From: Klebsormidium nitens
Lineage: Eukaryota; Plantae; Klebsormidiophyceae
Length of the DNA stretch: 58,521 bases
Direction of reading: 5' to 3'
Assembly: GCA_000708835.1 (NCBI GenBank)
Contig: DF237506.1
Location: 1-58,521 of the forward strand
Below the pieces are notes generated by a model. The model saw only the letters and a list, made by a program, of their open reading frames with translations, was not told the origin of the DNA and did no database searches. The translations under genes and the position numbers were made by a program. This document shows, in pieces, positions 19,705-57,129 of the stretch; the stretch's first letter is position 1; every line of letters begins with the position of its first letter.

Positions 19705-21850
19705 TGCTGACCAGACCCGACACGGCGACTTCCGCCCTAGGCTGAGTTCTCTGCAAATGGCTGGATCTGGGCAGCTTAAATGCAGCACTGTCGCACATGT
19801 GGGACAGACGCAAAGGTGGCAAGCAACTAGACACGGTCGTCTTTACGTGCCACTGTCATCGATGATTGCACCATCAATGTTCACCCATCCGATCACGACG
19901 TTAGATAATATGGTTAGGTACAGTGGAACCGGCGAGCGTGCATGCCGTACGATGAATGTGATTACCAAGTTGTGACGGCTCGGATTGCTCGATTCTGTTG
20001 CTTTGCACTGTTGCTTCATACCGTACCGTACGACCAACCTTACACGTTAACTTACACTGCCATGCAGGTACTGGGCGCCAAGGATCCTCAGACGAAAGAA
20101 GTGTTATGGCTTCAAGCATGATATGATGAAGCCTTCAATATGTCCTTGCAATATGCAAAGACCACTGGTCACGGATCTCACAGATTCCAGGTCTTAGTAG
20201 TCAAAAGTACCCCCGTCATGAGTTCAAAGCATGAGTTATTTCCAGCATGAGTTGGGGAGTTTTCGCGGATATCTGATTTTCTGCGGAAATAGCCCCTGCT
20301 CCAGAGATCAGTCTGCACGGACTGCTCGTCTTCGGACCATTCTCGGCGCTTGAAGCGTCCTCAATGCAACTTTTTTTCAATGCTATGCTCGTATTGGAGG
20401 GCTTTCAAGTGTGGCCTTTGACTTTGTTAGTAAAGAATGGGCTAAGACTAACAACACTTTGAACATGGCATGCTGGCCGAGGCCACTAAACCGCCACGAT
20501 TTTGACTACTGGAGGTCAGGTCTCTGATAGACAGAGTATTGTTGCGCGTCGATCGTTGCAAGCTTTGTTCAGCGGCGTGCTGAAAAGATTCGACCCTCGA
20601 GATTAGAAGGTTGGGTCCACTATTGTGCACGCTTTTGAAAAGGTACGGCCGGACCATGGTCCCATGCAATTGCTCGCACACATATGTCCACCTCGTTTCA
20701 AACTTGACTTTCCGGCATATGTAGCCACTTATGAACCGATCGTGCTCTCTCAAGCCTTTCCTATTCATTTTCTTCGACCCGTCGACTACAAGTCTGGCGC
20801 GAGGCTCGAGTGCCCAGCGTTGGATTTGGGCCCCTCGTCGCTGTTCTTCAACCGCTTCTACAGTCGGTAGTGCTTCATAATCATGTTCAGAACGTTTACC
20901 TGCACCATACATGCCCCTTCGTGGCGCGTGGCTCCCTTCTCCAACGGATGAATCGGACTCTGAAAAACAGAAAGGCTGAACGGCGCTTTGACGTCCCAAG
21001 TGCAGCATCAACTCATCAACTCATAACTCGCTGCGTGACGAGTACTTCGCCGTTCGAGGCACATTGGTGCAGTTGCTTCGATGATTTTAGAGACAGAGAT
21101 CTTGTGGATTCAGGATCATGCCGAAGTTGAGTGGTCAAACCCATTTTCTCGGAACGGAAAGTCCTCAAAGACAGGAAAGACGGCGAAGGTCAAACCAATG
21201 TGCCCAGTGGGCAAAAGTTTTGAACGTTGGGGATCGGCGCAAGTTGCCGGTGCACTCAGCGGAGTTCATCAGGATCCGAGGCCTGCTTGCTACCAACCAT
21301 CGAGATGGAAGATCGTTTCTAGCTGCCCTGGAAGCGTGACAAACTTTGAAAGTGTCACGTTCTATTCTGCCAAGAGGGGATTTTGACGTTCAGAAATCCA
21401 TAAAACAGCACATTCATTGTTGGTTTTGACTTGAAATCGATTCGTTTAAGCGCGGCAAGGGGTACGCATAGCCACCGAGACGAGGCCAAAGCGCTGATGA
21501 CAGCTGGTAAGCATATCGAGCCCGAACGTCGTCCGAAGTCTTGGCTTGTGAAAAAGGACAATTCTGGACCTTCGGCCGATGGTCCATAAGGGGCTTTCTT
21601 CCCGGCTTCCCAATTTCGGCGGGCAACGAGCCAGTCCATGGGTCATTCAGGTTCGCGAGCAAGGCCAGTGTTCACACGGCGGATCTGCGGCGCGCCGCTT
21701 TGAGCCGTAAGATCAGAAACGTGGCATCATCGGACGGCGAACCATAGGTTTGCTGCAGCTGCCCACCAATTACTGCAGCACACATTAGACGCTTTCACAG
21801 ACAAGGAAGGACCTTTCCTGCAACGTCAGAGACGTAGAACCGGGGTTGAA

Positions 21851-39400: not shown

Positions 39401-42400
39401 GACGAAGTTTTCTCCTTCCACCCAATACGTTTCTGACCCCATATATCATCGCGTTTCACCCCTGCAAACCCCCTCACCTGCTGTTCTGCGGCTTCCTTCT
39501 CCTGAGTGAGCTGCTGGATGCGCGCCTTGGCCCTCTTCTGTAGTAGGGCCAGGTTCTTCTCCAGCCCCGCCACCTTCTCATCCCGCTCCCGCAGGCCAGC
39601 CTCTAGAGCCGCCAGGGCTGCAGAACGGAAGAGGCAACGGAAGATGAGACACTCACTGGACAGTATGTACCTTCATCTCAGCACATCCATTAATGGAAAG
39701 ACAGCGCGAAGCACAACGTTCCATAGCTTTTTGAATGCCCAGGCACTTAAGTGAGTACACATACTGAAAGCAAGACAGCCAATGCTAGGAGGGATTCCCC
39801 CTCTGAGCTGTTCACAGAATGGCCACACCACAGCCCCATTCGTGTGAGACCGCCTACGACAGATGTACCTTCAGCATGCTTTGCCTGATCCTCTTGGCTC
39901 ATCGCCGCCTCTGCTGCGGATCCCGGGGCAGGCGCTGTCCCTGCGGGCTCCGTGGCCGCCAGCTGCTCCTGCAGCTCCGCATTGGCCTGCTGCGCCTCCC
40001 TCAGCTGCTGGGATGCCGTCTGCAGCTCCTCCTGTGCCATCTGCAGCTTCCGCTGCAAATGAGCCACAGCCGTCCCCACATCGCTGCTCTGCGCTTTCTC
40101 CTCCTCCAGTCTTTCCAGCTGGGCGCTGAGACCCTCAAACTCCCTGGCACTGTCAGATGGCGCCTGGCCAGTCTCCGCTCTCCCCCCCTCATGCTCTTCA
40201 AGTTGCGCTTTCAGGTTAGCAACTTCCGCGCTCAACTCAATGGCTCTAGCGGACTGTGCGCTAGCCTCATTTTGTGCCTCTTCCAACATGGCACGAGCAG
40301 CTGCAAGCTCCGTCCGCATCTCGGACAAACCGGACTCAACCTTGGACTTTGCGAGTTCCGCCTCCTTTCTTGTTTCCGCAATCTGTGACATCTCTGACTG
40401 GGCTGCTTCCAGTTCCTCTCGCATCCCCGCAAGTTGCGCCTCCAGTTCCACTCTAGCTTGTTCCCCCTCTTTCTTCGCTGCTTCAGACCTCTCCGTCTCA
40501 GTCACGAGCATCCCCTCCAGTTCCTTCGCCCTCTTTTCTGCCCCCTCCACATCAAGGAGGGCAGATGTCAGCTCTGCCCTCACCTTTTCTAGCTCCTCAC
40601 TGACAGCCCCTCTCTCCGCAGCACCCCGCCGCGCCGCCTCCAGTTCAGCAACAGTCTGCTCTTGCGCACGAACTGCCGCCTCCACCCTCTCCTCGGAAGC
40701 TTCAAGTGCTGCCTTTGCTGACCCTACTTCCGTTTGCAGCTCCGCCACCTTCCGCTCTAACTCTGCCCTCTTAGAGACCCCTTCTTCTGCAGCCAACTTT
40801 GCTGCGTCTTTCTCCCCCTCAATTGCTGCCTTTGCAGCCTGAAGGCTCGCCAGTTCTGCTTGAAGCTGCTCCTCCCCTCTGTTCTTGGCTGCTACAGTCT
40901 CTGCTAGTTTCTCCTCGGTAGTCTTCAGCTTCGATTCTAGGTCCACCACCTTGCCCTTGGCCTCGGCAGCAGCCTGGTCCATCTGTGCCAAGGTCTTCTT
41001 CGCATCGCTTGCTTCTCCCTCTGCTCTCCCTCTCCCCTCTTGAGCATCTCGCAGCTCCTTTTGCAGCTCTTGCACCTTAGCCTCCAGGCTTCCCGCCGAC
41101 GCCTGGACTGCCTCCTGCATGTCCAGACTCTCTTTCCGCGCCCTCTCCAGCTCCCCCTGCGCCGCCTCCAGTTTCGCCTGCAGGTCACTCACGGCCGCCT
41201 TCAGACTTTCCTGGGCCTCCAAATGGCCCTCCTTTGTCTTTTCCAAGTCCTTCTGAGCATCTGCCAGTGCAGACTTCTGAGCGGCCAATTCTTCCCCAAC
41301 CTCAGTGCTCCTCCTTACATGTTCGTCGATCTGCACTTCCGCCTCTGACAATTCCCCCTTCAACCTTTCAATGTCGCTCTCCTTCGCTGCCATTTCTTGT
41401 TTCTGTGCTAATTGCTTGGCTTCCATCTCAACTATCTCGGATTCCCGTTCCTTCCGAAGCTGCCCCAGTTCTAGCTCCATCTCCTTGCTCTTCTCTACTT
41501 GTGCCCGCAGCTCATTCACTTCCGTCAGCAGCACAGCCTTCTCCTCAGCCAGGCTTCGCCCCTCTTGCTTTGCCCCCTCAATCATGCTCTTTGCCTTGGC
41601 TTTCAAGTCCCCAAGCTGCTTCCGTAGGGTGTCCTCCACTTCCCCCTTTGCCGCTACTTCCTTCTCCGCCGCCTCTAGACGCACCCTCACAGCCTGCACC
41701 TCCAGCAGGCTCTTCTGCTCCGTGTCAGCATTCTCCTTCTCCCAAGTGGCCCCCGCCTCCTTTGCTGTCTCCAGGGCTGCAGCCAATTGTGCCTTTTCTT
41801 CCTCCAGCGCGCGCAACAGAGCCTCAGCGGCTCCGTGCTCCTCTGTGCCTCTAGCTTGCATCTTCGCCAGGTCCGCCTGCAACTTAGATTGCTCCTCTTC
41901 CGCCGCCTGCACCTCCGTCTTCAGTTGTGCCACTTCCGCTCTCGCTGTTTCAAGCTGGCCCTCCAGCTCCGCATTTGCCTTCGCTGCCCCTTCGGCCTCC
42001 CTCAGCACAGTCTCCAGTCTTTCCACTTCGTTCTTTGCCTTCTCATGCTCGCTCGAAAGAGCCCCGTACTTCTCCGCCGACGCCGCCATATTCCCCTGCA
42101 GCCCTTCGTACTTCTCCTTCAGCTCCACCATCTGACTCAGTGCTTCCTCTTGCTTTGCAGCAGCCCCAGTCTCCAACTCAGCCAGAGCCCTCTGCGCACT
42201 GTCCAATGCGGCCTTCAATGCCAGCGCCTCTTCCTTGGCCCTCGCTCCTTCCTGTTTCACCCGCTCCAACTCCTCCGTTTTCTGACCCGCTGCTTCTGAG
42301 CTGCTCTTCAAGTCCCGAAGTTGGGTGCTTGCTTCTTCCAAAGACTTCCTCGCCCCCTCCAACTCTGCCCTCAGTTCATTCACCTCTTTGCTTGCAGCCT

Positions 42401-45400
42401 CGCTTTCCTTTGCCTTCACCCCCGTCTCCTTCAGACGCCGTTGCAGTTCCTGAAGCTGGGCACCGGCGCCCTCTGAAGCTCTCCGAGCCTCCTCCAAGTC
42501 CGCTTTGAGATCAGCCACCTCCTTGGCCGCGGCTTCAGCGCTCACATTCCTCTCTTCTACCAACTTCTTCGCCTTCTGTCTCTCTGCCTCCAAGTCAGCC
42601 ACCACCTTCCCCAGCTCAGCCTCCTTGGCTTGGAGTTGCTCTTCCAGGGCTGCCACCTCACTGCCCCGTCTTGACTCCATCTCTTTCTGCGCCTCCGTCC
42701 GCTCGTTAGCTACATCTTCCTGCTCCCTCCTCAGCCTCTCACACTCCCCTCGTGCGTGCTGCAGCTGCTTCTCCAGCCCCTCAACCACCGTCTCCAGGCT
42801 CTCTTTCTCCGCCACTTGGCACAGCGCGTCCCTCAGCTGCTGCTCCAATTCCTCCAGCCGCCCCCGTCCTTGGCCAATCTCCTCATCCCGCTTCTTCAGC
42901 TCTGCCGACAGCGCCGCTCGCGCATCGTCTGCCTCCTTGACTGCCTGCCGGTTCTCCTCCTCAAGCTTCTGGACGATGACGCTCAGCTGTCCAATGCGCG
43001 TGTTGGATTCAGCCAGTGCAGCCATGCTGCTCCCGACCTGGCCCTGCAGCTCCGCTTTAGACGCCTCCAGCGAGCTCACGGCGCCCGCCGCCTCCTCTGC
43101 GGTTCGGCGGGCCTGCTCCAGGTGCCTCACCTGCAGAAACCATTGAAAGGGTCAATGCCGCGTTGCAGAGATGCACTTGGCCAGAAGAACTTAAGGTCAT
43201 CAATCGACAAAGCTCATTGCCTCATTGTGACGATGTCATCATGTCGCAAGGACGGGGAAAAAGATCCTCGTAAAATTGACTCCAGGATGCCCATATATTC
43301 GCGTCGTTGAGGGACGATCGACGCATTTGTGTGGACAAAGAACCTGCTTGTATGCCAGCTCACTCAGACTTCCTCACCATCTTCTCTGACCTGAGCCCCA
43401 AAAGCACAAAAAGGAACCGATGAGGTGGCAAAACAGTGACTGTGTCAAGGAGTCACGCAACCTCTTGCTGCGTTTGTAATGTCACCCAGACAGACCTTTC
43501 CACATGCTCAAGTTTCCGTGTACCTTGTCCTTCCTTAAGAACTTGGTTCGCATCTATGCCCATAGCAAACTGTGCGGAAAACACAAGTTCTGCAGCTATG
43601 CCCAGTGCCTACCTGCTCCTCCAGGACTGCCAACTTGTTCTCAGCGTCCGCCTTCGCCCGAGCACTGCGTGCCGCTAGGTCCTGGGCTTCAGCAAGCCCC
43701 TTTTTCAGAACCTCGTCCTCGTGTGCTGCCACCTTGTGTTCTGCCAGTACCTCCTCAGCCTGCTCTTTGGCCTTCGTCAGATCTTGCACCTGGACGAGGA
43801 TAGGCTCGTCACTCGCTGAAGCCCTGGACTTTGGAAGTGGGGCAAACAAACAGCTGGATGATGGCACTACAAATGTTATTTACAGTAACTGAAATGGCGG
43901 GTTATGTGGCATCCCTGCTTTGCGTCAATCCTCACCTGCCTCTCTAGCTGCATCAACCGGGATTGCGCTTGTTTCTGGACTTCATTGACTTGCCCAGCCA
44001 TCAAGTCACGTCCTTGTTCCAGGTTTTCAATGTCAGCAAGCAGCCGTTGATTGGCTGCCTTCAGATCTGCAACCTGATCGGAGACGTCCTGGCCCTGAAG
44101 GCAGGATAAGACAAGTGCGTAAGTTCTAGGAGCCTACAGTGCAAGATCTGACGACCGCTGAGCCGGTGCTGGACGTAAGCCCCTCTGCAATATGAGGATA
44201 CTGCTTCTCTCGAGCAAACAAAACGGTTTGTCTTCAATGTGGACAGAAGATCAATGCAGTAACAACTGCCCTTGTGTCCCCTAACCTGAGTCTTCTTCTC
44301 CAGTTCCGCCACTCTGCCCAGCAACTCCTGCTCCTTTGCTGCTCTTGCCTCCAGTTCCGCCCTGGCCTGCGAAAGCCGCTGCCTGGCTTTTTCCTGCAAC
44401 CAGTGAAGAACACGCTCCACATGATCATAAATTAAGCGAAAGGTAGAGTATGCCCCGACTCAAAGAACAATAAAACAGACGATGTCAGGTATTAACCTCC
44501 GCAAGGGCTTGTGTCACGAAAGGCACAGCATTGCAACCAGAGCTAGCAGATATGAGATAATAGCAGTCCAGACAGCACCACGTACCTTTATGCTGTTTGC
44601 ATAATCCTCTGCCGTGCTTCTCTGAGCACTGGCCTCCTGCAACTGCTGTTGCAACCCCTCAAGCATCTGCATGATGCAGTACAGTACCGGAGATCAGAAA
44701 TACGACTTGTCCAACAATTATGCAATAAGCTTGCATACAAAAATGCGGAATGCGGACAACATGGTCGTAGAGAAGACCCACATACCGTCACAAAGTGCTT
44801 TAAAAGACCCCTGACTCTGACCCCTTCAATGCAGTGGTTGCTGACACTTGCACAGTTGAAGCACAGGTCAAAAGCATGAACGGGCATCTTTGACAGGCCC
44901 ACCTTAAAGTGGGCATCTTTGTCTTGCGTGACCTCGCTCAGCTTCTTCCGAAGGCGCTCCCCCTCTTCCTGCGCAGCTGTAGCCACAGTCTGGCTCTCCG
45001 ATATCTTGGCGGCAGCGGTGAGCAATTGCGCCTCAAGCGCCTCACATTTCTACAAAAACCACCATGGAACTGTCATTAACACGGTGGTGCACATTACTGA
45101 CTACTCCACAACCTGAATAGCAACCCACAATCACATAGAGAGGCTACAACAATCTAGAAAGCAGCTTGGGACAAAAGTTCTCCGTCAAATGAACAGAAAG
45201 ACAAGGAAGCAGAATTCTTGGTTGCCACCAGCATGTCAATGCATCACATGCTGCAAAACTCACAACCTCTTCTACCTGTCTGCACGCTCACCTTCGACAG
45301 ATCCTCGATTTGGTTGTTGTCAGGGCCCCTTGTCCCTGCCTGAGCCTGAGCCAAAGCAGCTTCGGCTGTGGTGGCTCGGAGCTCGGCTGCTTCAAGCTTT

Positions 45401-46478: not shown

Positions 46479-49400
46479 ATGGGGGACAAAAATGGGGTCC
46501 ACGCTGTCTTCAATCTGAATCCAAAGGGCGCTGGGACCCTGAAGCTCCAGTCGGTGGTGCAGGAGAAGTTGCTGAGCTTCTTGGAGGCAGACTACACTGA
46601 CAAAGTCCTGGCGGAGTACATTGTTGTGTTGGTGGCCCACGGGAAGACCCAGAGCCAGGCCGCAGGGGAGCTGGAGGCCTTCCTGGGGCCAGAGAGGTCC
46701 AACTCCTTCACCGAATGGTGCGTGCCGTGTCAGGGCTGCCAAAGTGAACGTACTGTGTACATTGCAGACAGTGGTGGTACAGTTTGCAATTTGTGCACCT
46801 TGTTGCGTTGCATCCAATCACCCGGACGTGTGCGTCATTCTTTGCTTTTAGTCTTACCTCCTTTTGGCTGGCGCCTGCAAAGAAGGAAAGGCGCTTAATT
46901 CTGATTGCTGTGCAGGTTGTGGGACCATGTGTCTGCAAATCTGAGCATCTACTCAAACGCCAGCGAACCCGACCCTGATGCTGGCACCGAGGTCAGCCCG
47001 CGGCAGAGCGAGGCCAGCTCGGAATCAGAGGCCAGCGAGGGTCCCGAGTCGGGGGATGAGGAGCAGCTTGGAACTAGCTTCGAGAGGGCAGCTCGTTCCA
47101 ATCGGGGAGAGGACGAGAGATACCATGAAACATCGCAAGATCAGCGTGCACGGGTGGATGATAGGGATGATCAAAGAGGGGCCTTGCGGCACCGGAAGGA
47201 GCACGATGGCAGGAGTGGTCACCATCGGCATGAGAGGGAAAAAGAGGAGAGAGACTCAGGAGAGAGACGGCGCGGTGAGGAGCGAAGACGCAGCAGCCCC
47301 CCAGAAAGAGTTGAGCGTGAGGAGAGGCGGTCGCACCAGAGGCGCAAGTCGAGGGAAGACTGGCACAGGGAACGGAAGGGGAGGGGGTTTGGAGAAGATG
47401 ACCGGCATGAGAGAGACAGCAGGCATGGAGAGAGGGAGCACTACGGACGGGACCACCCGCTGCCCCCTCCCCCGCCACCACCGCCGCGAGGGGAGCCCTT
47501 TCTGGAGGAGAGGAGAGGGGACTGGGGTGGAGGTCGCAGGGACGAGCAGCGGTCCATGGCGGAGGAAGGGGCTCGAGTCCAGCGGCAAAATAGCACTCGG
47601 ATGGAAGGGGGAATGCTGGGGCAGAAACGGCCGTGGCAGGTGGCGCAGGCGAATATGGGTGAGGGGCGCATTTTCCACCGGTGTGCGTCCCAGTTCCAGG
47701 ACGCCATGCTTTCGCCGGGAACCAAGAGGGAATGTCTGGATTGTTAGCTCTGCTGATTCATCAAATGCGTTCCCTGCTTTAGTGCCAGCCATCCTGCTTG
47801 TCCCTGCGCTCATTGTCCCAATGCTCTTTCACCGGCGTATCTCCGTTGTTGCCAGTAGGGTGACAGGAATTGGTTTCCCTCTCTTTGCTGACGAAGAGCC
47901 CATGCCACTTTCTGATACAACTTTGTGTGACATCCCCTGGAATTACTTGGATTTGAATCATACCCGTTGTTTTGGCAGATGCTCATTCGAGCGACCCTCC
48001 CCCGCCGCCGCGGTCTCGGCCGCGCCTGGCTGGCATCCCCGACTATGCCCGCATCATGGGCATAGCGCTGAAAGCTGTTGCAGAAGCAGCCGATGAGGCT
48101 GCACAAGCGGCCAAAGGTGGGCCAGCGGCTCCCCCTGCACCTGCTCCTGCAACCCGAGTTGCGGGGGGCGATGTCTGGCAGCGCTTGAGCGCGGAAGCGA
48201 CATGGAAGAGCGGCAGGGCAGAACATCCCCGGGAAGAGGAGCCCCTTGTAGCACAGCAGGAGCTGGAGCAGCCCGGCCGGGATGCGGAGCGGCGTCGGAT
48301 GAATGCGAAGCTGCGGGAGAGGCTCACCAAGGCGGCAGACGTTACGAAGAAGATGGTGCGGGAGGGCCCGGCAGGCCCATCGGTGACGGTCACTTTCAGG
48401 GCGAGAGAGCGGGCATCCCGAGGGCCGAGGCTGCACCGGAGGCAGTTCGACGCCCAAGAGCAGCCCCCGCAGGAGGCCGCCTGGCAGGAGGAGTCGGTGG
48501 ATCGAAACGGAGACCGGCGGGTCGAGCGGGAGAGCAGGAGGTGGGGGGAGGCGGAGGCCACCGAGGTGGAGCCAGAGGCTGAAGAGGTGGCGCCAGAAGA
48601 AGAGCAGCCAGAAGAGGTGCAGTGGCAAGAAGTAGAGGAGGGGGAGGAACAAGAAGAGGCGGCCTTTGAGGAGGGAATGGAGGCCGCAGAAGAGGAGCCG
48701 GGGACAAGCGTGGATGTTGACGTGGCAGAGATGAAGCGGCGCATGCGAGCGGTGCAGCTGGAGATGATCAAGCTGCGGGCCAAGCAGAGGGAAGGCGAGC
48801 GGACCCAGGCGGCACTGCCAGGTGAGCCGCACGCGCAAGCAAACCTGATGGACGTAACTGCTTCGATCGATCGAGAATATTAGAAGAACCCCTGGGTAAA
48901 AGGGTACAGAATAGCTAAGGCAGAAGCGACCAAGTGTATTAAGTTGCAAAGCCGTTCTTTGTCCACTTATGAAGCTGACTGTCCACATCTGGAGCTGACT
49001 TCGAAGACATGCTATTGCTTCTGCTCTCGATCGATTGTGAAGGACTTAGAGCCACTAGTTTCACCCGTCGAAGTATTGACAACACTGATCTTGGAGAGCA
49101 ATCGGTCATGGTCTTATTGTGTGGGCAAATCAAACATGTCCATGCGTTACATTCCCGTGTTCTTGATTGAGAAAGGACTCGTTGCTTCCACACTTCACCT
49201 GGAGAGAACACCCTACTCCTTAACAGGTTGATCCGTACGGCTTTCGTATGGTCTCGACCTTCACGGCATGATTGTACAATACGGTCTTTTCTGGGTTTGA
49301 CATGCGGCTCTCACCTACTTGAAAGAGAAGGCTGGTTGGGTTCCTCATATCAAGAAACTACTCAAGAGATAATGGCGACGTCGGCCAGCAGGAAGCCCGG

Positions 49401-50791
49401 ACGATGCTATCTGAACTGAGGAGGTTCTCGAAGAGATTAGGTCGAGCCTTCTTTAATTGGCTTCGAACATCCGTATTGTGGTGCTCTTGTTATGCAGGTC
49501 CCCTGCCCGTGGTAAAGCCGCCCACCCCGCAGGAGCTCGACGCCCGCACCGTCGTTGTGTCTAACGTAAGCCACAGACCTGTGCTTGAGCCTAGAGCCAG
49601 CTGCGCCTTTTTGATCTCGGGTTGTCCGGTATACGAGCGGCTTGCTTCGATGCTTCATGCGGTCAGACATCCGTGATTGATGCGCGGTGTCTTCATAGTG
49701 CAAGCGCTGCGACTCTTGGTTGCCAACGCCTTCCCGTAGGCTCCTACCCGGCCTGCTGGCATGCTCTTTCCTTGCCCTCGATCTGTGGTGCTCACGTTCC
49801 ATCCGTCACCCTGCAGGTTCACTTCGCTGCCACCAAGGAGGTGCTCGCGGCCCACTTCAGTCAGGCGGGCGCTGTCACGGACGTCCGTATCCTGCTGGAC
49901 CCAGGCACCGGCAGGCCCCGAGGGTGAGACGCACCGTCGGCCCTACACCAAACGGAGATCCCTTGCTTTGCCGCCTAGATAGATTGAAGCACCGCGCCCT
50001 GTCACCCTACCTTTCACCAGGAGTAAGGAGTGGGTAGAACCACGCGCGCACTTCCAACATCAAGGGCGTCCGGTGGGAACCACTTCTAGGAACTCTTACG
50101 TTGGGCTAACTCGACGGCCGCTCTTTGCTGCAGTTGTGCGTTCATCACGTTCGACTCCGAGGATGCTAAGGAGCAAGCTCTTGGCTTGGACGGCACGTCC
50201 ATCCTGTCCAGGCAGCTCAAGGTAAGCCGGGCAGCACCCGCAAACAGAGACCGCACCCGCAAATATTGACGGAGCATAGGGCATATGCTCCGTCAATATT
50301 TTCAATTCAGAGCTTTGTCCTTCCTGCCTCGTATCTTTCCAGTCAACCTCACTCCCACCTCTGACCTGAATGAAAGCTCCTGATTCTACGTGCGTCGCCG
50401 AATAATTTCGCACTTTTGGTTCAAAAGGGTACATAACGAGTCCCCGGTCCCTCGCTCCTCGCAGGTCGCCCCCAAGTCCAGTGCTTTGGCCATCTTGAAG
50501 TCGCTGCCCACCTTCGTGCCACGCCCTGTGCCTGCTCCCCTGGTCGCGAGGGGACCCCGGCAACCCCTCCGGCGAGGCGCAGTGAGGGGGGCCAGCACCA
50601 AATGGGTGCGCCCAGGTGCTATGATGCCCCCCCCCGCCAAGTCGCCCCGGTCGCCCCCCATTCCGCAGAACCTGACCTGGCGGCGGTCGGCCAGCACGGG
50701 AACCCCGCCTGCCGTTGTCAACCAGAGCCAGCCTGCGAACAGCGTGGCAGACCATGCCGATGCGGACAATGGAGGAGCTAGGGAAGCATAG
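46479..50791 (+). CDS. PWI-like (Nab2/ZC3H14-type N-terminus) plus PABPN1-like RRM RNA-binding protein
   Basis: Exon 1 has KLLSFLEADYTDKVLAEYIVVLVAHGKTQSQAAGELEAFLG..SFTEW|LWDH. An Arg/Glu-rich middle follows. Spliced RRM: DARTVVVSN|VHFAATKEVLAAHFSQAGAVTDVRILLDPGTGRPRG|CAFITF..ALGLDGTSILSRQLK|VAPK. Tail has KWVRPG and NLTWRR, stop at 50791. Confidence 0.88.
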
Positions 50792-52284
50792 CGTAAAGGC
50801 TGTCCCTGCCCGTGGTCCGGATGTCCAGCGGCCAGAAACCCCGTTCAGGCATCCAATTCAGCATCGGGCAACCATTGAAAAGATCGCAGATGCAGATGCC
50901 AGCCAGGTTAGTTAACACCCGCACCTGCTGGAGTAATATCTGGCCTGGGTCCAAGATATTCCTCAAGGTATTTGCAGTTACAGCGGCATTAACGAGAACG
51001 GAGTAGAAGACCTTGACTTCATTCTCCGCTGCTGTGTCGTGCATATGTAGTCTGGCATGGAACAGTCATGTGTTCTTGTCATTAGATAACACGGTGATAG
51101 CGGGCTCCGGTCAGGTTCCTTGCAAGCTAGACACCACTTGCCAACTGTTCACGTGAGCCCATGGCTCATTTCATGAGATTGGCAACTTTCTCCCAGTAAA
51201 GTCCTCAATCGTAAGCTTTGGATATGTCAGTCCAAGAGAGTCGCGGTGAGTCATCGCAGATTTAGCCGCTCATTGCGGCAAGTTGCGCATGAGGTATGAG
51301 GGCGTTGCTGCAACACGAGGCGTTGGCAAGTGGCAGGCATCTACGCCCAAAAGCCCATGCGAGACCAGTAGGCGAGACCCAAAGTGAACCCTTGTTGTTA
51401 TTGTAGAACAGTCATGAATTTCTGTCCCCTTGTTGCAATAAATTGCATCACATGATGGGCCATAGGCTTCCATGGCATACAATGTTTCAATGACTTTCAA
51501 TGATGATCACTGCAACGAAAGCCGTCCGAAGCCAGAGGCTTTGAAGCCGCATTAGATTGCGTCGTCTTGCTGTTTCAATGATAAAGAGCTCGATGTCACC
51601 AGCTATATATAAATTTCGCTTAGAAGTCACTGAGCGCACAACCGTCACGTGTCGGACGTACGCGTGACTCAAACCACTGGCTTAACTTTAAGTTCGTGGC
51701 AAATCATTGAATGATGCATGCTCAGTAGCGCCGCGCGGTCTCAAAGCCGCAACCGCGAGGGTTTTGAAGAGGTTTGCGCTAGTCCAGTCGAAGCCGCGCA
51801 ACCTGGACCGCGGCCGCGACCTGCTCGACATCGGCCGGCCCGCGGCCGCGCCAAACGCTGGCATGTATGGCCGGACTCAGCACTGAAATTCCCTGCATAT
51901 GGACCTATATACTAGGTGCCTAGCTGAAGCAGAGAAGGCTATTGCCAGCCGCGGATAACAGACGGCATCGATGCGAGCAGACCACAAAACGACAAGAGAA
52001 GAGGCGGTTGCTTTCCTTTGTTTCTTGTCTTGACATAGCCGGGGAACCTGCCATGAAGACCCCTGTGGCGGTTTGCCTGAAGAGAATGTGCCTTCTGGTA
52101 GGAATCCTCATGACTGAGGCTCAATTGAACTTTTTGAGCTGGAAATGCAGGGGACGACTCGCAAAACTTTGTCTCGTATATTTGAGCTCCACGCAGGTCC
52201 ATTTTGAACACTTTGTAGTGGCGAAGAAGATCCTGAAAGGAAGCTCCAAGAGGATCAACCGTGCAGCTCTCAGCTGCAGCTCAA

Positions 52285-55200
52285 ATGGCAGCCAAGCAAG
52301 CTGTTGCATCATGTGGTCTCGTCCTACTTTTGCTGGTAGGCAGCACCTATGGCGCGTTTGAGATGGTGAATACGCCATTTGGGGTGGTGTCCACAGGAGA
52401 TGCCACGTTTTACGGGGATCCGCAGGGGGGTGGCGTAGATGGTGAGGTCAATCAGCTGGAGCCCTGCATGTTAGAGTGTGCTGAGCAGCTTCAGTTGGAA
52501 CCGATGCCTCATCCAGCTGGCCCTTATCTATGCAGCAGCTAGAGAGCTGGAATTTTCCTCTCTACCTTAGGCCTTTGAGCTTCTGACTTGGTCTTGAAGC
52601 TAACAAGTGGTCTAACAAGCAGGTTTCAGATGGCAGCCTCCCCTTTCTTTGGTCACCTGAAAAGGACGACACGGGTGAATGCATTTGAGCCAGCTCAAAG
52701 GGTGTGGTCAACATCTATTTTGCTTACAATGGTTTTTCAGTCCTTCAAGGACCAGGTTCAGAGAACCAGGCAATTTAGCAGATCTTTTTTTGAGATTCAG
52801 CTCAGCGTATTGCACTGCGGATTTTGATTGCTTTCAACATATTCTGCAGGGGGAAATTGTGGCTACTTGGGACTGAGGCGGAATCTTGGTAGTCTGAAAC
52901 ACCAGACATATGGCCTCCAGATCAGCGCTGCCAGCTATCCTCTGTGGCAGGATGGAGCTGGCTGCGGAGCTTGCTACAAGGTAGGAGCCGCACTGATCAC
53001 GGCACCTCAAAACTTTCCAGTGCAGTTGAGAATCTGAGTTCAGTTTGTTTTGAGTACATGTTTTGAGCATGTGTTCACGTACTACAAAAGAGTGGGCTCT
53101 TTCCCGTTGTTTCCAGCTCAGCTCAGTGTTGGCTTGAATCCCTCTCCTTTAAACCAGACTCTAAGCTTGACACAGTCTGCATTCAACCCGCGTATCCTGT
53201 GAGGGTCATGTGCGCAGCCTCTTCGCATGATGCAAGTGTGATTACGACCCATACTGTTCCGTTGAATGCCCCAGTAACCCATAAGCAACTGTCACAAACA
53301 CCCACATCGTAACCATGCAGCTCAACCACCTCCAGACTCGTGGCAGTTCCTGGTTATTTAAGTCCACAAGACTTCCTGTTTAGGCGACCAATCAGCTGTC
53401 AGCTGTAGTGTTATTGGTCGCTTATTGGAAGTCCGGCAAGTCATACACCCAGGCGTGTGCTGGACACTTCCATCTGACATCATGGTGACCGTTACTACCG
53501 GTTCAGTACTTACCTTCTATCCCCATGTGAGTGCAACCCATAAGCAGCTGGGGCTAACCAATAAGCTATCGTCCTCTTGTTGCAGGTCAAGTGCGTCGAC
53601 TCCAAGTTCTGCCTGGACACTGAGCTGGTGGTCACCATCACTGACTTCTGCCCCGACGAGGGCTGGTGCGACGCCTGGAAGTTCCACTTCGACCTGGGCG
53701 GCGCGGCATTCCCCCAGCTCGCGCAGGTCCAGGCAGGCCACTTCCCCCTCACCTATGAGAGGTGCGTTCTTCTCCTCGCTGACTTGTGCTCCTGCTAATT
53801 TCGGGATGGCTTTCGAAACTCTGTGCACGCGTTTTTTGTGCACCACTGCTTACTCTTCCCTAATGAAAATGTTCTGTCTTCTGCCCTTTTTCCGTTTCTA
53901 GACGTCAGCTTCCTTCCTAGACGTCAGCTTCATGCTCACAGCCGACTGGTCCGCTTATCCCGACCGCACTGATCCAAAAGGGTCGCCCTTCCGAGGAAAG
54001 TCTCAGCCCAAGTATGATCCCATTGTCCTCCGGGCGCTGTTCGCTTGTACTGAGTGTCAAAATGGTTCAAATCATAAGCAACACTGGCACACCAGAATCC
54101 CCAAGCCCTGAAAGCCACGAACACTTCGACAACCAAAACCTCGAACCTTTTTGTTCTTCCCGCCACAGAGTCCCCTGCCCCCGCCAAGGCCCCATCGTGC
54201 TCCGGGTTATGGGTAACCCCTTCTGGTTATCCGTCCTCTCCGAGAACGTGGGCGGCGCGGGCACGACTGATGCCATCGAGATTCAGACCCCCGAAAACCC
54301 GGACTGGATCAGCATGACGCACGACTGGGGGGGCTTCTTCAAGGTCTCCGGGCAGAGCTTCCCGGGGCCACTCTCTGTGCGGCTGACGCAGAAACTGACC
54401 GGGGAACAGGTGAGGACGGCCCGGGGAAAGGGGTGTGTCGGCCGTGCGATCAGCGCTGACGAAGGGCCTCGACTTGAGGGCTTTCGCTGCATGTATGTGG
54501 ATCTCGTGTGAAGGAGAGATGCGGGCTTGTCAGTCCCAACCGTTGTCAATCTGAGAAACTTCCAAAAGCAGCACATCAACGTGGATGCTTGGCGCATCCA
54601 TCTGTTTCATCTTCGCACTTAGAGTGGCTTCTGTAGGCTTTTCGAAGCCTGGAATTGGGAGTGTCTGATAATTATGGCGTTGGACCGACGCTGCACGACG
54701 TCTTGTTCTTTCATCGGCAGCTCAGGGAAGCTCGACCGGTTACTTTGACTGGTCGACTAGGACGAACCCCGATCATGAGACCTTTGTACCACCGATGCTA
54801 CATACCTTTCCGCTGTCCGTTTATCCCTTTCCTTATCTCCCTTTCCACCTTCTGTCAGGTCGTTCTCAAGAACTGCATTCCAGCCAACTGGGTCCCCAAC
54901 ACGGAGTACACCTGCGACGCCAACTTCGGCGACGGCTCCTCCTCCGCTATCCAAGCCCCTATCCCGACCGATCCCCAGACTCCCGCCCCGACCCCTATCC
55001 CGACCACTCCCGCCCCGACCTGATCCCCAGACTCCCGCCCCGACTGATCCCCAGACTCCCGCCCCGACCATTCCCGAGACTCCCGCCCCAACCGATCCTC
55101 AGACTCCAGCCCCGACCGATCCCCAGACCCCTTTGCCAACAGCCGCGCAAACCCCCGCCCCGCAAAACACAGAGGCGCATATATCTTCCCCGACGTCGGT

Positions 55201-56048
55201 TGCGGGCACCGGCTCTCCAACCGATGCGCCCGTCTCGACCCCCACGCCTGTCAAGACAACGATCTTGGAGGACCCCACTGAAGCCGCGGACGTCAGCGGA
55301 GCAAGCTGCATGTCGTGGCCGCAGGGGCAGAGCCACCGGCGGCTGTTGGACGCATCGACGGTTCAGCTGTGCACCAAGGTGGGTGGGAGGGCGGATACTT
55401 TTGTGCTGACTGCTTTACTTGAACCTTGAATCTGCAAGTGGTGGTGTCGGTTCCTCTGGCTGAGCTTTGAAGCTGTTCAATATGTTTGCACAGTTTGCAA
55501 CAGTATGATCAGCTTTCACTTGGTTCCCTTGGTTCTAGGTGGGCGGCTTTTCCAGGTGACTCCTGAACGTGAAAGTTATGGTATAAAGGTCGAAGCTCAT
55601 CCTTTCAACTCGGTGGACTGGCATCGAACAACCGTTCCGTATCCTTCGCAAAGAACGCGTCATAACCACTGTTCAGACGGGATAAGGTGACTACATAAAC
55701 AAAGCACTGACTCAGTCCGGCGCCCATTCTCACCAGGTGATCAGCGAGTGGACTGAAGGCATTGACGCCACCCAGATTGCGCAGTACCAGCTGAACCTGA
55801 TCAACAATGGGAAAGCGCCCTTAACCGGCATCACGATGAGCCTGACCAACTTCAAGCCGTGGTATGACCAGTACTGGAAATTTAACTACAACAACGACAC
55901 GCAAACCGCAACTCTGCCTGGCTGGCGAGTGCCGCTTGTGAGCGGCCAGACCTTCGAGTTTGGGTACATCCAGGCGGGGGCGAACGGGGCGACTTTCTTG
56001 ATCCAAGACGTGCAGTTTGCGGCGGTGGCAAAGAGGCGGTCCAACTAG
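52285..56048 (+). CDS. Secreted expansin-like protein (DPBB + CBM63) fused via a Pro/Thr linker to a C-terminal CBM49-like domain; +1 frameshift in the linker as assembled
   Basis: Exons 52285-52441, 52850-52980, 53586-53761, 54169-54409, 54859-55378, 55737-56048. Signal peptide (LVLLLLVGSTYGA), ATFYG, GGNCGY, GAGCGACYKVKC, TITDFCP, HFDLGGAAF, NPFWLSV..NVGGAG, HDWGG, IPANWVPNTEY. Last exon SEWTEG..QYQLNLINNG..YW..TLPGW..LVSGQTFEFGYI. Confidence 0.9.
54964..55128 (+). repeat. Coding minisatellite, 24-nt unit (ccgaccgatccccagactcccgcc = PTDPQTPA)
   Basis: About six degenerate units. One unit near 55015-55039 is 25 nt (ccgacCtgat), which brings TGA 55021-55023 into frame. Confidence 0.9.
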
Positions 56049-57129
56049 AGCTGGGCGAATGCAGTCGGCCGGCAAAGGAGTTGGTTAGGATAGAGAGCTT
56101 TCGCAGATCACTTAGTTCACCAGCAAAATTTGTATATTATGCCCAGAAAAGCAGGCAGCTGTACTATCTATACCAATTGAACATCACCTCAGTCACGTAG
56201 AACCAGTATGTGTCAGGTTGGAGCTTTCAAGAACCTGGCCCAGATCATTAGAGCCAAATTTAATCAGCCCAGATAAGCGTTCAGACACTTTAAATTCAAT
56301 CACGCGTGTACCGTCATTAGTTTTTTATTTTATGCCAAGCAAGGTCGGTGCATGGGACATTTCAACTGGAGCTTATATCAGTCGAGTATGAAAGGAGAGA
56401 CTGATCAGATGCAGCATAAGCGCCATGGTCAGAATCATTTCCCCCTGTCACTCCGGGGATTCAGCGTGCACGCATGGTGGAGTGCTCCCACTCCGACCGT
56501 CCATTGAATCCTATGCTCACAGTAGTCACAAAGTGTTATATACCAGTTCCAGATCGTTCTGTCCTATCCCGTCCTGATCGAGCTCAAACTTGAAACGAAC
56601 TGAGCACCTCTCTTTCGTACGCCGGGCCCCATACATAGGCGCCACGGCCACAACGTCGTAGAAACGAGTGCGGATATTCGGGAGCCGACCCAGTCGCCCA
56701 CGTGTGTGTGCAGACTCATTCCATGCAGGCTTGTCCACTCATGAGCGTGCGTTTGATATATACCCTGTCACAAAGCCTGAATGAATATAACTAATTGCCG
56801 AAGCTACCCATGGCCTAAGAAGTTTAGCTAAGACGCCACCGCTCCCATCTTGCCACGGTAACGAGGGCCGCCTCCGACGCCCATGTTTGGTCCCCGCGCG
56901 TGGAAATAGTCAATTGTGTTCACTGTCCGATCGATAGGATCCGATCGGCCGAAGCCCTGCTCTTTCAGGTTGCATGATTGCTAGTTCACCACGTCTATCT
57001 TATCACTCATATATATTTATAGGTATAATTCCGCGCTTACACACAACTTGAAGCGACGGCCAGGCATGTCCCAGGCAAGTCATGTACGTGCTCAATATAT
57101 GCCACGCGTCTCGACGTATCTCAATTTTC

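What the first reader, a model, noticed from the sequence alone, without database searches (positions are those of the whole stretch)
52285..56048. Expansin-like protein fused to a CBM49-type cellulose-binding module
Seen: a complete signal peptide, DPBB domain (GGNCGY, CGACY, HFDL) and CBM63 domain, then a long PT-rich linker and a separate last exon with the CBM49 pattern (W-x-EG..QY-x-L-x-L-x-NNG..W..LP-x-W..L-x-x-GQTF-x-FGYI). Established: land-plant expansins (EXPA/EXPB/EXLA/EXLB) are two-domain proteins; plant CBM49 is known on class C GH9 endoglucanases; extra CBM or GH modules on expansins are mainly a microbial feature. Inference: this alga may have a tethered, cellulase-style wall-loosening protein built by exon shuffling, since the CBM sits on its own phase-0 exon. 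I do not know of this architecture being described, but I could not search.
Basis: partly seen in the sequence, partly recalled or inferred. Interest (0 to 1): 0.8.

Follow-up and report, generated by a model that had tools for sequence, protein, structure and literature searches.

The report
Algal expansin tethered to cellulose-binding module
The alga Klebsormidium nitens transcribes one gene that joins a cell-wall-loosening expansin, through a long flexible stalk, to a cellulose-binding module (CBM49); I found this build described only for microbial expansins, and a one-letter assembly error had hidden it in the published annotation.

Summary
Window 52285-56048 (+) is a six-exon gene of Klebsormidium nitens NIES-2285 (scaffold DF237506.1 / kfl00557). 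It encodes a signal peptide, an expansin (DPBB_1 and Expansin_C), a roughly 140-residue Pro/Thr-rich linker and a C-terminal CBM49. Each domain passes Pfam's cut-off when scanned exon by exon.

Spliced RNA contigs from three studies show four of the five GT..AG joints directly, including 55378>55737, which attaches the CBM49 exon. The fifth joint appears as loose ends.

The "frameshift" is an extra T at 55021, inside a 24-bp tandem repeat. The RNA contigs that cross it lack the T, and no DNA contig laid covers it. Two related Klebsormidium-like loci have exon 5 in one open frame.

Because of that T, published annotations split the gene into a 290-aa "EXPA" and a 126-aa CBM49 piece.

The CBM49 exon is under purifying selection (dN/dS 0.13). 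It folds as a CBM2-like sandwich and keeps the three cellulose-stacking tryptophans.

Most likely function: a wall-loosening protein anchored to cellulose, analogous to bacterial expansin-CBM2 fusions and fungal swollenin. Exon shuffling is not shown. How widely the architecture occurs outside Klebsormidium could not be settled.

The scan's first readers flagged two more such loci in this genome.

The parts
52285..52441 (+). Exon 1: start codon, 23-residue signal peptide (52285-52353), and the start of expansin domain 1 (GDATFYGD...GGG). Ends in phase 1.
   Evidence: Sequence read. Joint 52440>52849 seen in RNA contigs of X5 and X12. The signal peptide was judged by eye (K4, hydrophobic core GLVLLLLV, TYG|A); no predictor was run.
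52850..52980 (+). Exon 2: GGNCGY ... CGACYK, the first half of the DPBB domain.
   Evidence: Weak DPBB_1 hit at profile positions 2-20. Joints on both sides are seen. 95% identical to L001 with dN/dS 0.08.
53586..53761 (+). Exon 3: the second half of the DPBB domain, with TITDFCP and the HFDL motif. Ends in phase 2.
   Evidence: DPBB_1 34.2 bits, E 3e-8, profile positions 37-83 of 83. The joint to exon 4 is shown by loose ends at 53761 and 54167.
54169..54409 (+). Exon 4: RVPC... and most of expansin domain 2 (CBM63 / Expansin_C).
   Evidence: Expansin_C 52.3 bits, E 6e-14. Aligns to domain 2 of Phl p 1 (1n10) and maize EXPB1 (2hcz), E about 1e-4. dN/dS 0.13.
54859..55378 (+). Exon 5: the end of domain 2 (54859-54936, VVLKNCIPANWVPNTEYTCDANFGDG), the Pro/Thr-rich linker, a conserved C-x19-C segment, and the first 6 codons of the CBM49 fold (55361-55378).
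   Evidence: Joints 54406>54856 and 55376>55735 are seen in X5, X10 and X12. The linker is 42% P+T with net charge -10. The orthologous exon in L001 is a single open frame of 237 codons.
54963..55128 (+). 24-bp tandem repeat, 6.8 copies, encoding the octapeptide (D/I)P(Q/E)TPAPT. This is the core of the linker.
   Evidence: Tandem Repeats Finder: period 24, 81% matches, score 226.
55021..55021 (+). Extra T in the assembly. It creates a false TGA at 55021-55023 and a +1 shift. Most likely an assembly error.
   Evidence: Reported as 'left out 1' at 55021 in RNA contigs of X5 (depth 30) and X12 (record 16, 54964-55044, no other difference). DNA run X1 has depth 0 at this place, because its contigs stop at 55020. 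L001 and L003 keep one frame. The published model kfl00557_g9 ends at 55023.
55737..56048 (+). Exon 6: CBM49 module (fold ends near 56018), a basic tail AKRRSN, and the stop codon.
   Evidence: CBM49 42.4 bits, E 9e-11. AlphaFold model pLDDT 84.9. Structural match to CBM2 with Z 9.4 for 3ndy_E and 8.9 for 6qfs. dN/dS 0.13 against L001.
56049..56200 (+). 3' UTR, at least this far. RNA contigs run on beyond the stretch that was laid.
   Evidence: RNA contigs of X5, X10 and X12 cover 55735-56200 and continue (table 8).

Best explanation
This is one nuclear gene of Klebsormidium nitens for a secreted protein of about 511 residues with three modules. The first is a canonical two-domain expansin: D1 is a DPBB domain with the HFD aspartate, and D2 is a CBM63 domain. 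The second is an acidic Pro/Thr-rich stalk of about 140 residues built on an octapeptide repeat. The third is a C-terminal CBM49, a CBM2-fold, type-A-like module that keeps three surface tryptophans.

Shown here: the gene structure, its splicing, its transcription, the three domains, the fold of the third module, and purifying selection on it.

Inferred: after secretion, the CBM49 binds the flat face of cellulose microfibrils. This holds the otherwise acidic, freely diffusible expansin in the alga's own wall. The extended stalk, probably O-glycosylated, lets the expansin head reach load-bearing junctions nearby and loosen them without hydrolysis. In effect it is a cellulose-anchored wall-loosening agent for cell growth or filament remodelling. 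It is the eukaryotic, endogenous counterpart of bacterial expansin-CBM2 fusions and fungal swollenin.

The split in the published annotation (a 290-aa expansin plus a 126-aa CBM49 piece) is an artefact of one extra T in the assembly.
For: - Domains: Pfam scores above cut-off for DPBB_1, Expansin_C and CBM49, scanned exon by exon. Exon 4 aligns to domain 2 of EXPB1 and Phl p 1.
- One mRNA: four GT..AG joints plus loose ends for the fifth, in RNA contigs of three studies and absent from the DNA run. NCBI's own 126-aa model uses the same 55378>55737 splice.
- In frame: the RNA contigs lack the T at 55021. Orthologous exon 5 is one open frame in L001 and stays in one frame in L003.
- Selection: dN/dS is 0.13 on the CBM49 exon and 0.08-0.13 on the expansin exons, while introns are only 55-61% identical.
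- Fold: AlphaFold pLDDT 84.9. The best solved matches are cellulose- and chitin-binding CBM2 modules (Z 9.4, 8.9, 8.1, 7.8).
- Binding residues: a profile of the module hits CBM2 chains by sequence (E 1.5e-4 to 1.4e-3). It aligns W47 and W63 (exon-6 numbering) with the CBM2 tryptophans in 'QAW' and 'APW' of the C. fimi Cex CBD (1exg); I recall these as W54 and W72. It aligns W5 with the first CBM2 Trp of 3ndy. All three are invariant in the three algal copies.
- Literature: linear arrays of three aromatics bind cellulose in CBM2, CBM49 and CBM63 (PMC11423589). Tomato CBM49 binds crystalline cellulose (cited in PMC3500288).
- Charge: the expansin part has net charge -11, the linker -10 and the CBM49 +1.
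- Precedent: expansin-CBM2, CBM2-expansin and CBM1-expansin fusions occur in microbes (10.1101/637728).
Against: - No biochemical data exist for this protein. Neither cellulose binding by the CBM49 nor wall loosening by an algal expansin of this clade has been measured.
- The T at 55021 could not be checked in DNA reads. The only DNA run laid has no contig across it.
- The RNA evidence is from assembled contigs, not single long reads, so no single molecule spanning all six exons was seen.
- Acanthamoeba CBM49 protein also binds beta-1,3-glucans (PMC10880599), so the ligand need not be cellulose.
- Plant CBM49 modules were not recovered as sequence relatives. The nearest are dictyostelid CBM49 repeats at about 30% identity.
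Confidence: 0.7

Rival explanations
1. The architecture is the same, but the CBM49 targets a different ligand. It would anchor the expansin to callose or another beta-glucan that is abundant in Klebsormidium walls, rather than to crystalline cellulose. The protein would then act at callose-rich cross walls or in desiccation-related wall flexibility.
For: - A recombinant Acanthamoeba CBM49 protein bound curdlan and laminarin (PMC10880599).
- AtGH9C1's CBM49 was proposed to recognise a special form of glucan (PMC3500288).
- A paper on callose in Klebsormidium walls and its link to desiccation tolerance appears (PMC4650865, title and abstract only).
- The nearest sequence relatives are amoebozoan CBM49s, not plant ones.
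Against: - All three planar tryptophans typical of type-A, crystalline-surface-binding CBM2a are kept.
- The best structural matches are cellulose- and chitin-binding CBM2 modules.
Confidence: 0.15
2. The CBM49 is only a temporary appendage. After secretion the linker, or the conserved HRR-containing segment before the module, is cleaved. This would release an ordinary two-domain expansin and a free cellulose-binding protein, so the fusion would serve co-secretion or delivery rather than permanent tethering.
For: - Pro/Thr-rich linkers are commonly sensitive to proteases (general knowledge).
- A conserved basic motif, QSHRRLL, lies just upstream of the module in all three algal copies, with low model confidence there.
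Against: No evidence of processing exists. Linker length varies (173 codons in exon 5 here against 237 in L001), yet the fusion is kept in three genomes.
Confidence: 0.08
3. The frameshift is real in strain NIES-2285. The locus would then make a 290-aa expansin ending at TGA 55021-55023 and, at best, a separate 126-aa CBM49 peptide without a signal peptide, as the public annotations have it.
For: - The reference assembly carries the T.
- Both public annotations split the locus.
- No DNA contig laid crosses the site.
Against: - RNA contigs from two studies of the same organism label lack the T and otherwise match perfectly.
- The site lies in a 24-bp tandem repeat where the short-read contigs break.
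- The downstream frame stays open and conserved with dN/dS 0.13-0.17.
- Two related loci have no shift.
Confidence: 0.04

Closest known systems
Bacterial expansin-CBM2 fusions (EXLX fused to CBM2 in some Actinobacteria, Cyanobacteria and beta/gamma-proteobacteria; Nikolaidis et al. 2014; Chase et al., 10.1101/637728)
   Same: A two-domain expansin is followed by, or follows, a CBM2-fold module of about 100 residues that binds cellulose through three surface aromatics. The order expansin-CBM2 exists in bacteria.
   Different: Here the module scores as CBM49 rather than CBM2. The gene is nuclear, has five introns, and belongs to a wall-bearing alga that presumably uses the protein on its own wall rather than a host's. 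The linker is a long octapeptide repeat.
Fungal swollenin (CBM1 - Ser/Thr linker - expansin-like domains, Trichoderma reesei)
   Same: An expansin-type head is tethered to a cellulose-binding module by a long hydroxy-amino-acid-rich linker.
   Different: Swollenin has its CBM at the N-terminus, and the CBM is of the unrelated small CBM1 fold. It acts on foreign plant walls. Its expansin part is divergent.
Plant class C GH9 endoglucanases (SlCel9C1/SlGH9C1, AtGH9C1)
   Same: A secreted wall-modifying protein carries a linker and a C-terminal CBM49.
   Different: The partner there is a hydrolytic GH9 catalytic domain, not an expansin. The plant CBM49 modules were too distant to be found with this module as a single-sequence query.
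Land-plant and other algal expansins (EXPA/EXPB; algal 'EXP' of Chara, Spirogloea, Micrasterias)
   Same: Signal peptide, domain-1 cysteine motifs (GGxCGY, CGxCY), HFD motif and Expansin_C domain 2.
   Different: Those proteins are described as two-domain proteins of about 250-270 aa. Long C-terminal extensions are noted for MdEXP2 and PpEXPA20, but I found no named content for them in the passages I opened. This protein adds a linker and a CBM49 and is acidic.
Amoebozoan CBM49 wall lectins (Acanthamoeba Luke; Dictyostelium CBM49 matrix and spore-coat proteins)
   Same: These are the nearest sequence relatives of the module (P0008-P0010 and P0013-P0017, about 30% identity) and share the pattern W..G...TQ(Y/F)...I.N.G..P...W....LP.W...G....FGYI.
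   Different: They are tandem CBM49 lectins without an expansin. In Dictyostelium, the expansin-like protein expl7 and the CBM49 proteins are listed as separate genes.

Membership tests
Expansin superfamily | N-terminal signal peptide for secretion | tested here: inconclusive
   Judged by eye only: MAAKQAVASCGLVLLLLVGSTYG|AF. No signal-peptide predictor was available. It is conserved in L001 and L003.
Expansin superfamily | Domain 1: DPBB fold with conserved Cys motifs and the HFD aspartate | tested here: met
   Pfam DPBB_1 34.2 bits, above the 28.8 cut-off, on exon 3. GGNCGY, CGACY and HFDL were read directly. The expansin part holds 10 Cys.
Expansin superfamily | Domain 2: CBM63 / Expansin_C with conserved aromatics | tested here: met
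   Pfam Expansin_C 52.3 bits, above the 24.6 cut-off. Aligns to domain 2 of 2hcz and 1n10, including NP(F/N)(W/Y)L and the two W positions.
Expansin superfamily | Non-hydrolytic wall-loosening (creep or stress-relaxation) activity | not testable with these tools
   Requires protein and wall assays.
EXPA (alpha-expansin) family in the strict sense | EXPA-specific signatures (HATFYG, the alpha-insertion with GWCN) and placement inside the land-plant EXPA clade | not tested
   Wang et al. 2024 label the truncated model 'EXPA' and place K. nitens expansins in the early-diverging clade 'EXPA I'. A 2026 study argues that algal expansins are neither EXPA nor EXPB. Here only GDATFYG was read in place of HATFYG. 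No tree was built, because the joined protein was not assembled.
CBM49 (Pfam PF09478; CAZy family 49) | Sequence match to the family profile above the curated threshold | tested here: met
   42.4 bits on exon 6 and 43.4 bits on P0001, against a cut-off of 23.4, covering profile positions 5-79 of 80.
CBM49 (Pfam PF09478; CAZy family 49) | CBM2-like beta-sandwich fold | tested here: met
   AlphaFold model pLDDT 84.9 with 8 strands. Top solved matches are CBM2 modules: 3ndy_E Z 9.4 with rmsd 2.4 over 92 residues, 6qfs Z 8.9, 2rtt 8.1, 1exg 7.8.
CBM49 (Pfam PF09478; CAZy family 49) | Linear array of three surface aromatic residues | tested here: met
   W5, W47 and W63 of exon 6 align with the three CBM2 tryptophans. 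They are invariant in three algal copies and aromatic in the amoebozoan repeats. Coplanarity in the model was not measured, because no coordinates were available to scripts.
CBM49 (Pfam PF09478; CAZy family 49) | Binding to crystalline cellulose | not testable with these tools
   Requires pull-down or isotherm assays with Avicel or bacterial cellulose.

The most novel reading that the evidence does not exclude
Early-diverging streptophyte algae may possess a family of endogenous modular expansins (expansin - glycosylated stalk - CBM49). If so, the 'two-domain only' rule for plant-lineage expansins would be a land-plant simplification. CBM49 would have been a mobile wall-targeting module in the green lineage, attached to expansins in Klebsormidiophyceae and to GH9 cellulases in land plants. 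Tethering would be a natural experiment showing how anchoring to cellulose changes expansin action.
Probability: 0.25. Interest if true: 0.65.

Novelty: new variant of a known kind. Interest (0 to 1): 0.5.

Why it matters
Expansins of the plant lineage are described as compact two-domain proteins. Extra carbohydrate-binding or catalytic modules are treated as a microbial speciality, linked to attack on foreign walls. The main survey of such fusions excluded green plants.

A transcribed, conserved expansin-CBM49 gene in a streptophyte alga shows that an organism can use the same design on its own wall. This has four consequences:
- It provides a natural construct, with and without the tether, for asking how residence on cellulose affects loosening.
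- It bears on the open question of what expansins do in green algae, which a recent review lists as outstanding.
- It places CBM49 in the green lineage in a context other than GH9.
- It corrects the record. The published K. nitens gene set, and a 2024 family census built on it, list this locus as a 290-aa EXPA. NCBI lists only a 126-aa 'alpha-expansin' that contains no expansin domain.

Tried and rejected
- **Paralogs in the window.** tblastn of all exon peptides found none.
- **Single-sequence phmmer of exon 6 against 1.84 billion representatives.** It gave only 8 hits at E <= 1e-3: one ortholog fragment, three multi-CBM49 proteins (one from Dictyostelium purpureum; the others look amoebozoan), and four long repetitive or unrelated proteins. 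None has an expansin domain. Plant GH9C modules and the K. nitens paralogs were not recovered, so this search cannot tell how common the architecture is.
- **Word searches.** Exon 6, exon 4 and an alignment led by a 372-aa dictyostelid protein found only fragments of the same gene in three genomes, plus dictyostelid CBM49 proteins. No full-length algal fusion protein came back.
- **Two metagenome scans** with alignments of exon 6 and exon 4 found nothing.
- **ESM Atlas**, by features and by shape, gave only bacterial CBM2-type clusters and no cluster combining expansin and CBM49.
- **Scan findings searched by sequence** were blank.
- **Carey & Cosgrove 2007** (PpEXPA20's extension) is not held.
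- **An intron inside the linker** as an explanation of the frameshift was rejected. There is no GT in the region, and the RNA contigs show a 1-nt difference, not a splice.
- **Synteny.** L001 shares the 5' flank (67% identity over 266 nt), so it is an ortholog. L003 shares no flank, so it may be an ortholog or a paralog.
Full report
**Where the window comes from.** A word search with the last exon returned a 126-aa NCBI/UniProt protein called 'alpha-expansin [Klebsormidium nitens]' on a contig of exactly 58521 bases. Looking it up placed it on DF237506.1 of assembly GCA_000708835.1. The window is therefore a whole scaffold of K. nitens NIES-2285. The same locus appears as scaffold kfl00557 in a published table.

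**The observation.** Reading 51800-56600 and translating each exon gave six exons on the + strand:
- 52285-52441
- 52850-52980
- 53586-53761
- 54169-54409
- 54859-55378
- 55737-56048

All five introns begin GT and end AG. Pfam, scanned exon by exon, gave DPBB_1 at 34.2 bits on exon 3, Expansin_C at 52.3 bits on exon 4 and CBM49 at 42.4 bits on exon 6. All three are above the curated cut-offs. Exon 4 also aligns to domain 2 of maize EXPB1 and Phl p 1.

**Is it one transcript?** Contigs of four public runs were laid on 52200-56200.
- Runs X5, X10 and X12, from three studies, carry contigs that skip exactly 52442-52849, 52981-53585, 54410-54858 and 55379-55736, each with GT..AG ends.
- The exon 3/4 joint shows as loose ends that read the first bases of exon 4 and the last bases of exon 3.
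- DNA run X1 covers the introns and has none of these joints.

NCBI's own 126-aa model uses the same splice.

**The frameshift.** In the window, exon 5 reads into TGA at 55021-55023, and the rest of the exon is open in the +1 frame. The site lies in a 24-bp tandem repeat of 6.8 copies that encodes (D/I)P(Q/E)TPAPT.
- Table 4 reports one letter left out at 55021 in an X5 contig (depth 30) and in an X12 contig (54964-55044, no other difference).
- The DNA run has depth 0 there, because its contigs stop at 55020.
- In two related loci found through fragments of the same gene, exon 5 keeps one frame. These are L001 from a Logan assembly and L003 from a JGI metagenome contig of 293 kb. In L001 it is a single open frame of 237 codons.

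The extra T is therefore most likely an assembly error. Without it the coding length is 1536 nt, or 511 residues.

This one letter explains the public annotation. Table S2 of Wang et al. 2024 lists kfl00557_g9_v1.1 at 52282-55023 as a 290-aa, 5-exon 'EXPA'. NCBI annotates only the 126-aa tail and no gene over the expansin domains.

**The third module.** A Pfam scan of the 126-aa natural fragment starts the CBM49 match two residues before the exon junction. An AlphaFold model of that fragment was built with an alignment of the three algal copies and seven amoebozoan CBM49 repeats. Its mean pLDDT is 84.9, and its first strand covers residues 18-30, so the strand starts six codons before the junction. 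The module is therefore nearly, but not exactly, one exon.

The best solved matches are CBM2 modules:
- EngD 3ndy_E: Z 9.4, rmsd 2.4 over 92 residues
- C. fimi CBM2a variant 6qfs: Z 8.9
- 2rtt: Z 8.1
- 1exg: Z 7.8

. A profile of the alignment also finds these chains by sequence, at E 1.5e-4 to 1.4e-3. It aligns W47 and W63 of exon 6 with the tryptophans in 'QAW' and 'APW' of C. fimi Cex (W54 and W72 from my memory of that structure). It aligns W5 with the first CBM2 tryptophan of 3ndy. All three are invariant in the algal copies. A linear array of three aromatics is the established cellulose-binding device of CBM2, CBM49 and CBM63 (PMC11423589).

**Selection.** Against L001, which shares the 5' flank and is therefore an ortholog, dN/dS by region is:
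- exons 2-4: 0.08-0.13
- the conserved end of exon 5: 0.17
- the CBM49 exon: 0.13

dS is 0.28-0.78 across the compared segments, and introns are only 55-61% identical. The CBM49 is as constrained as the expansin domains. L003 is a third, more distant copy with all six exons and a CBM49 that is 76% identical.

**Paralogs.** The reads also show a close paralog:
- contigs with 12 differences over 54166-54335, in both DNA and RNA runs;
- a contig with six differences and a shorter linker;
- a loose end after 55380 that reads VTEWTEGD, the start of another CBM49-like exon.

I could not fetch that gene. Table S2 of Wang et al. lists a 527-aa, 6-exon K. nitens expansin (kfl00857_0040) and an 885-aa one. 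First readers of this scan flagged two more 'expansin-CBM49' loci on other pieces of this genome (s1-327025 and s1-305671). These notes are unchecked leads.

**How it probably works.** The expansin part is acidic (net charge -11), the linker is 42% Pro+Thr with charge -10, and the CBM49 is about neutral. The linker carries 11 TP, 9 AP and 2 SP dipeptides and no PP. From what I know of plant hydroxyproline glycosylation, that pattern favours arabinogalactan-type O-glycans and an extended stalk; this is inference.

My reading is that the CBM49 docks on the flat face of cellulose microfibrils and keeps an otherwise diffusible, acidic expansin in the wall. The stalk then lets the expansin head work on nearby junctions. 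Retention may matter more for an alga bathed in water films than for a land plant. This too is inference.

**Rival readings.**
- The ligand may be another beta-glucan, such as callose. An Acanthamoeba CBM49 protein bound curdlan and laminarin, and a paper on callose in Klebsormidium walls is listed.
- The module may be cleaved off after secretion.
- The frameshift may be real.

**Comparison with what is known.**
- Microbial expansins are known to be fused to CBM1 (swollenin), CBM2, CBM32 and GH5. That survey excluded Viridiplantae by design.
- In the literature I could search, plant CBM49 appears only on class C GH9 endoglucanases.
- The algal and plant expansin papers I could search mention no CBM49 on an expansin. 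Those that state a structure describe two domains. Long C-terminal extensions of Micrasterias MdEXP2 and moss PpEXPA20 are noted, but I found no named content for them in the passages I opened.
- In Dictyostelium, the expansin-like protein expl7 and the CBM49 proteins are listed as separate genes.

This is therefore a new variant of a known kind: an expansin plus a cellulose-binding module, in a new lineage, with a different CBM family and, presumably, a self-directed role.

**Limits.**
- No whole-protein scan, fold or tree was made.
- Searches meant to reveal the architecture elsewhere were uninformative. I cannot say whether it is confined to Klebsormidium.
- 'Exon shuffling' was not tested.

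Noticed in passing
window 55310-56048: NCBI and UniProt name the 126-aa product of this stretch 'alpha-expansin', although it contains only the linker tail and a CBM49 and no expansin domain. The expansin domains upstream lie in no NCBI gene model.
   Followed up: yes
window 55307-55378: A conserved C-x19-C segment (…C MSWPQGQSHRRLLDASTVQLC…) lies just before the CBM49 fold. It is kept in L001 and L003 with dN/dS 0.17, but its first part is modelled with low confidence. It could be a disulfide loop or a processing site.
   Followed up: partly
window 54166-55380 (seen only in reads): Contigs of a close, expressed paralog appear in the reads. One has 12 differences over 54166-54335 in both DNA and RNA runs. 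One has 6 differences and a shorter linker. A loose end after 55380 reads VTEWTEGD. The paralog is not in this window.
   Followed up: partly
window 47310-50791 (+): The upstream neighbour is annotated by NCBI as an 804-aa RRM_1 (RNA-recognition motif) protein.
   Followed up: no
window 18484-19788 (-): A long open frame matches Na_sulph_symp (sodium:sulfate symporter family) at 289 bits. It is probably a large exon of a transporter gene.
   Followed up: no
window 39750-43130 (-): An open frame of 1127 codons has no Pfam family above threshold; the only hit is a weak ADIP match. It could be a large exon of an unknown, possibly coiled-coil, protein.
   Followed up: no
L003 2291-2401 and 3293-3346: Just upstream of exons 3 and 4 of the L003 copy there are degenerate, stop-containing duplicates of those exons (46% and 56% identity). 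They suggest old partial exon duplications inside the introns.
   Followed up: no
Wang et al. 2024, Table S2 (not in the window): Chlorophyte 'EXPA' entries are also far longer than 250 aa: Volvox 551 aa, and Coccomyxa 873, 507 and 446 aa. Their extra regions are not described and might hold further modules.
   Followed up: no
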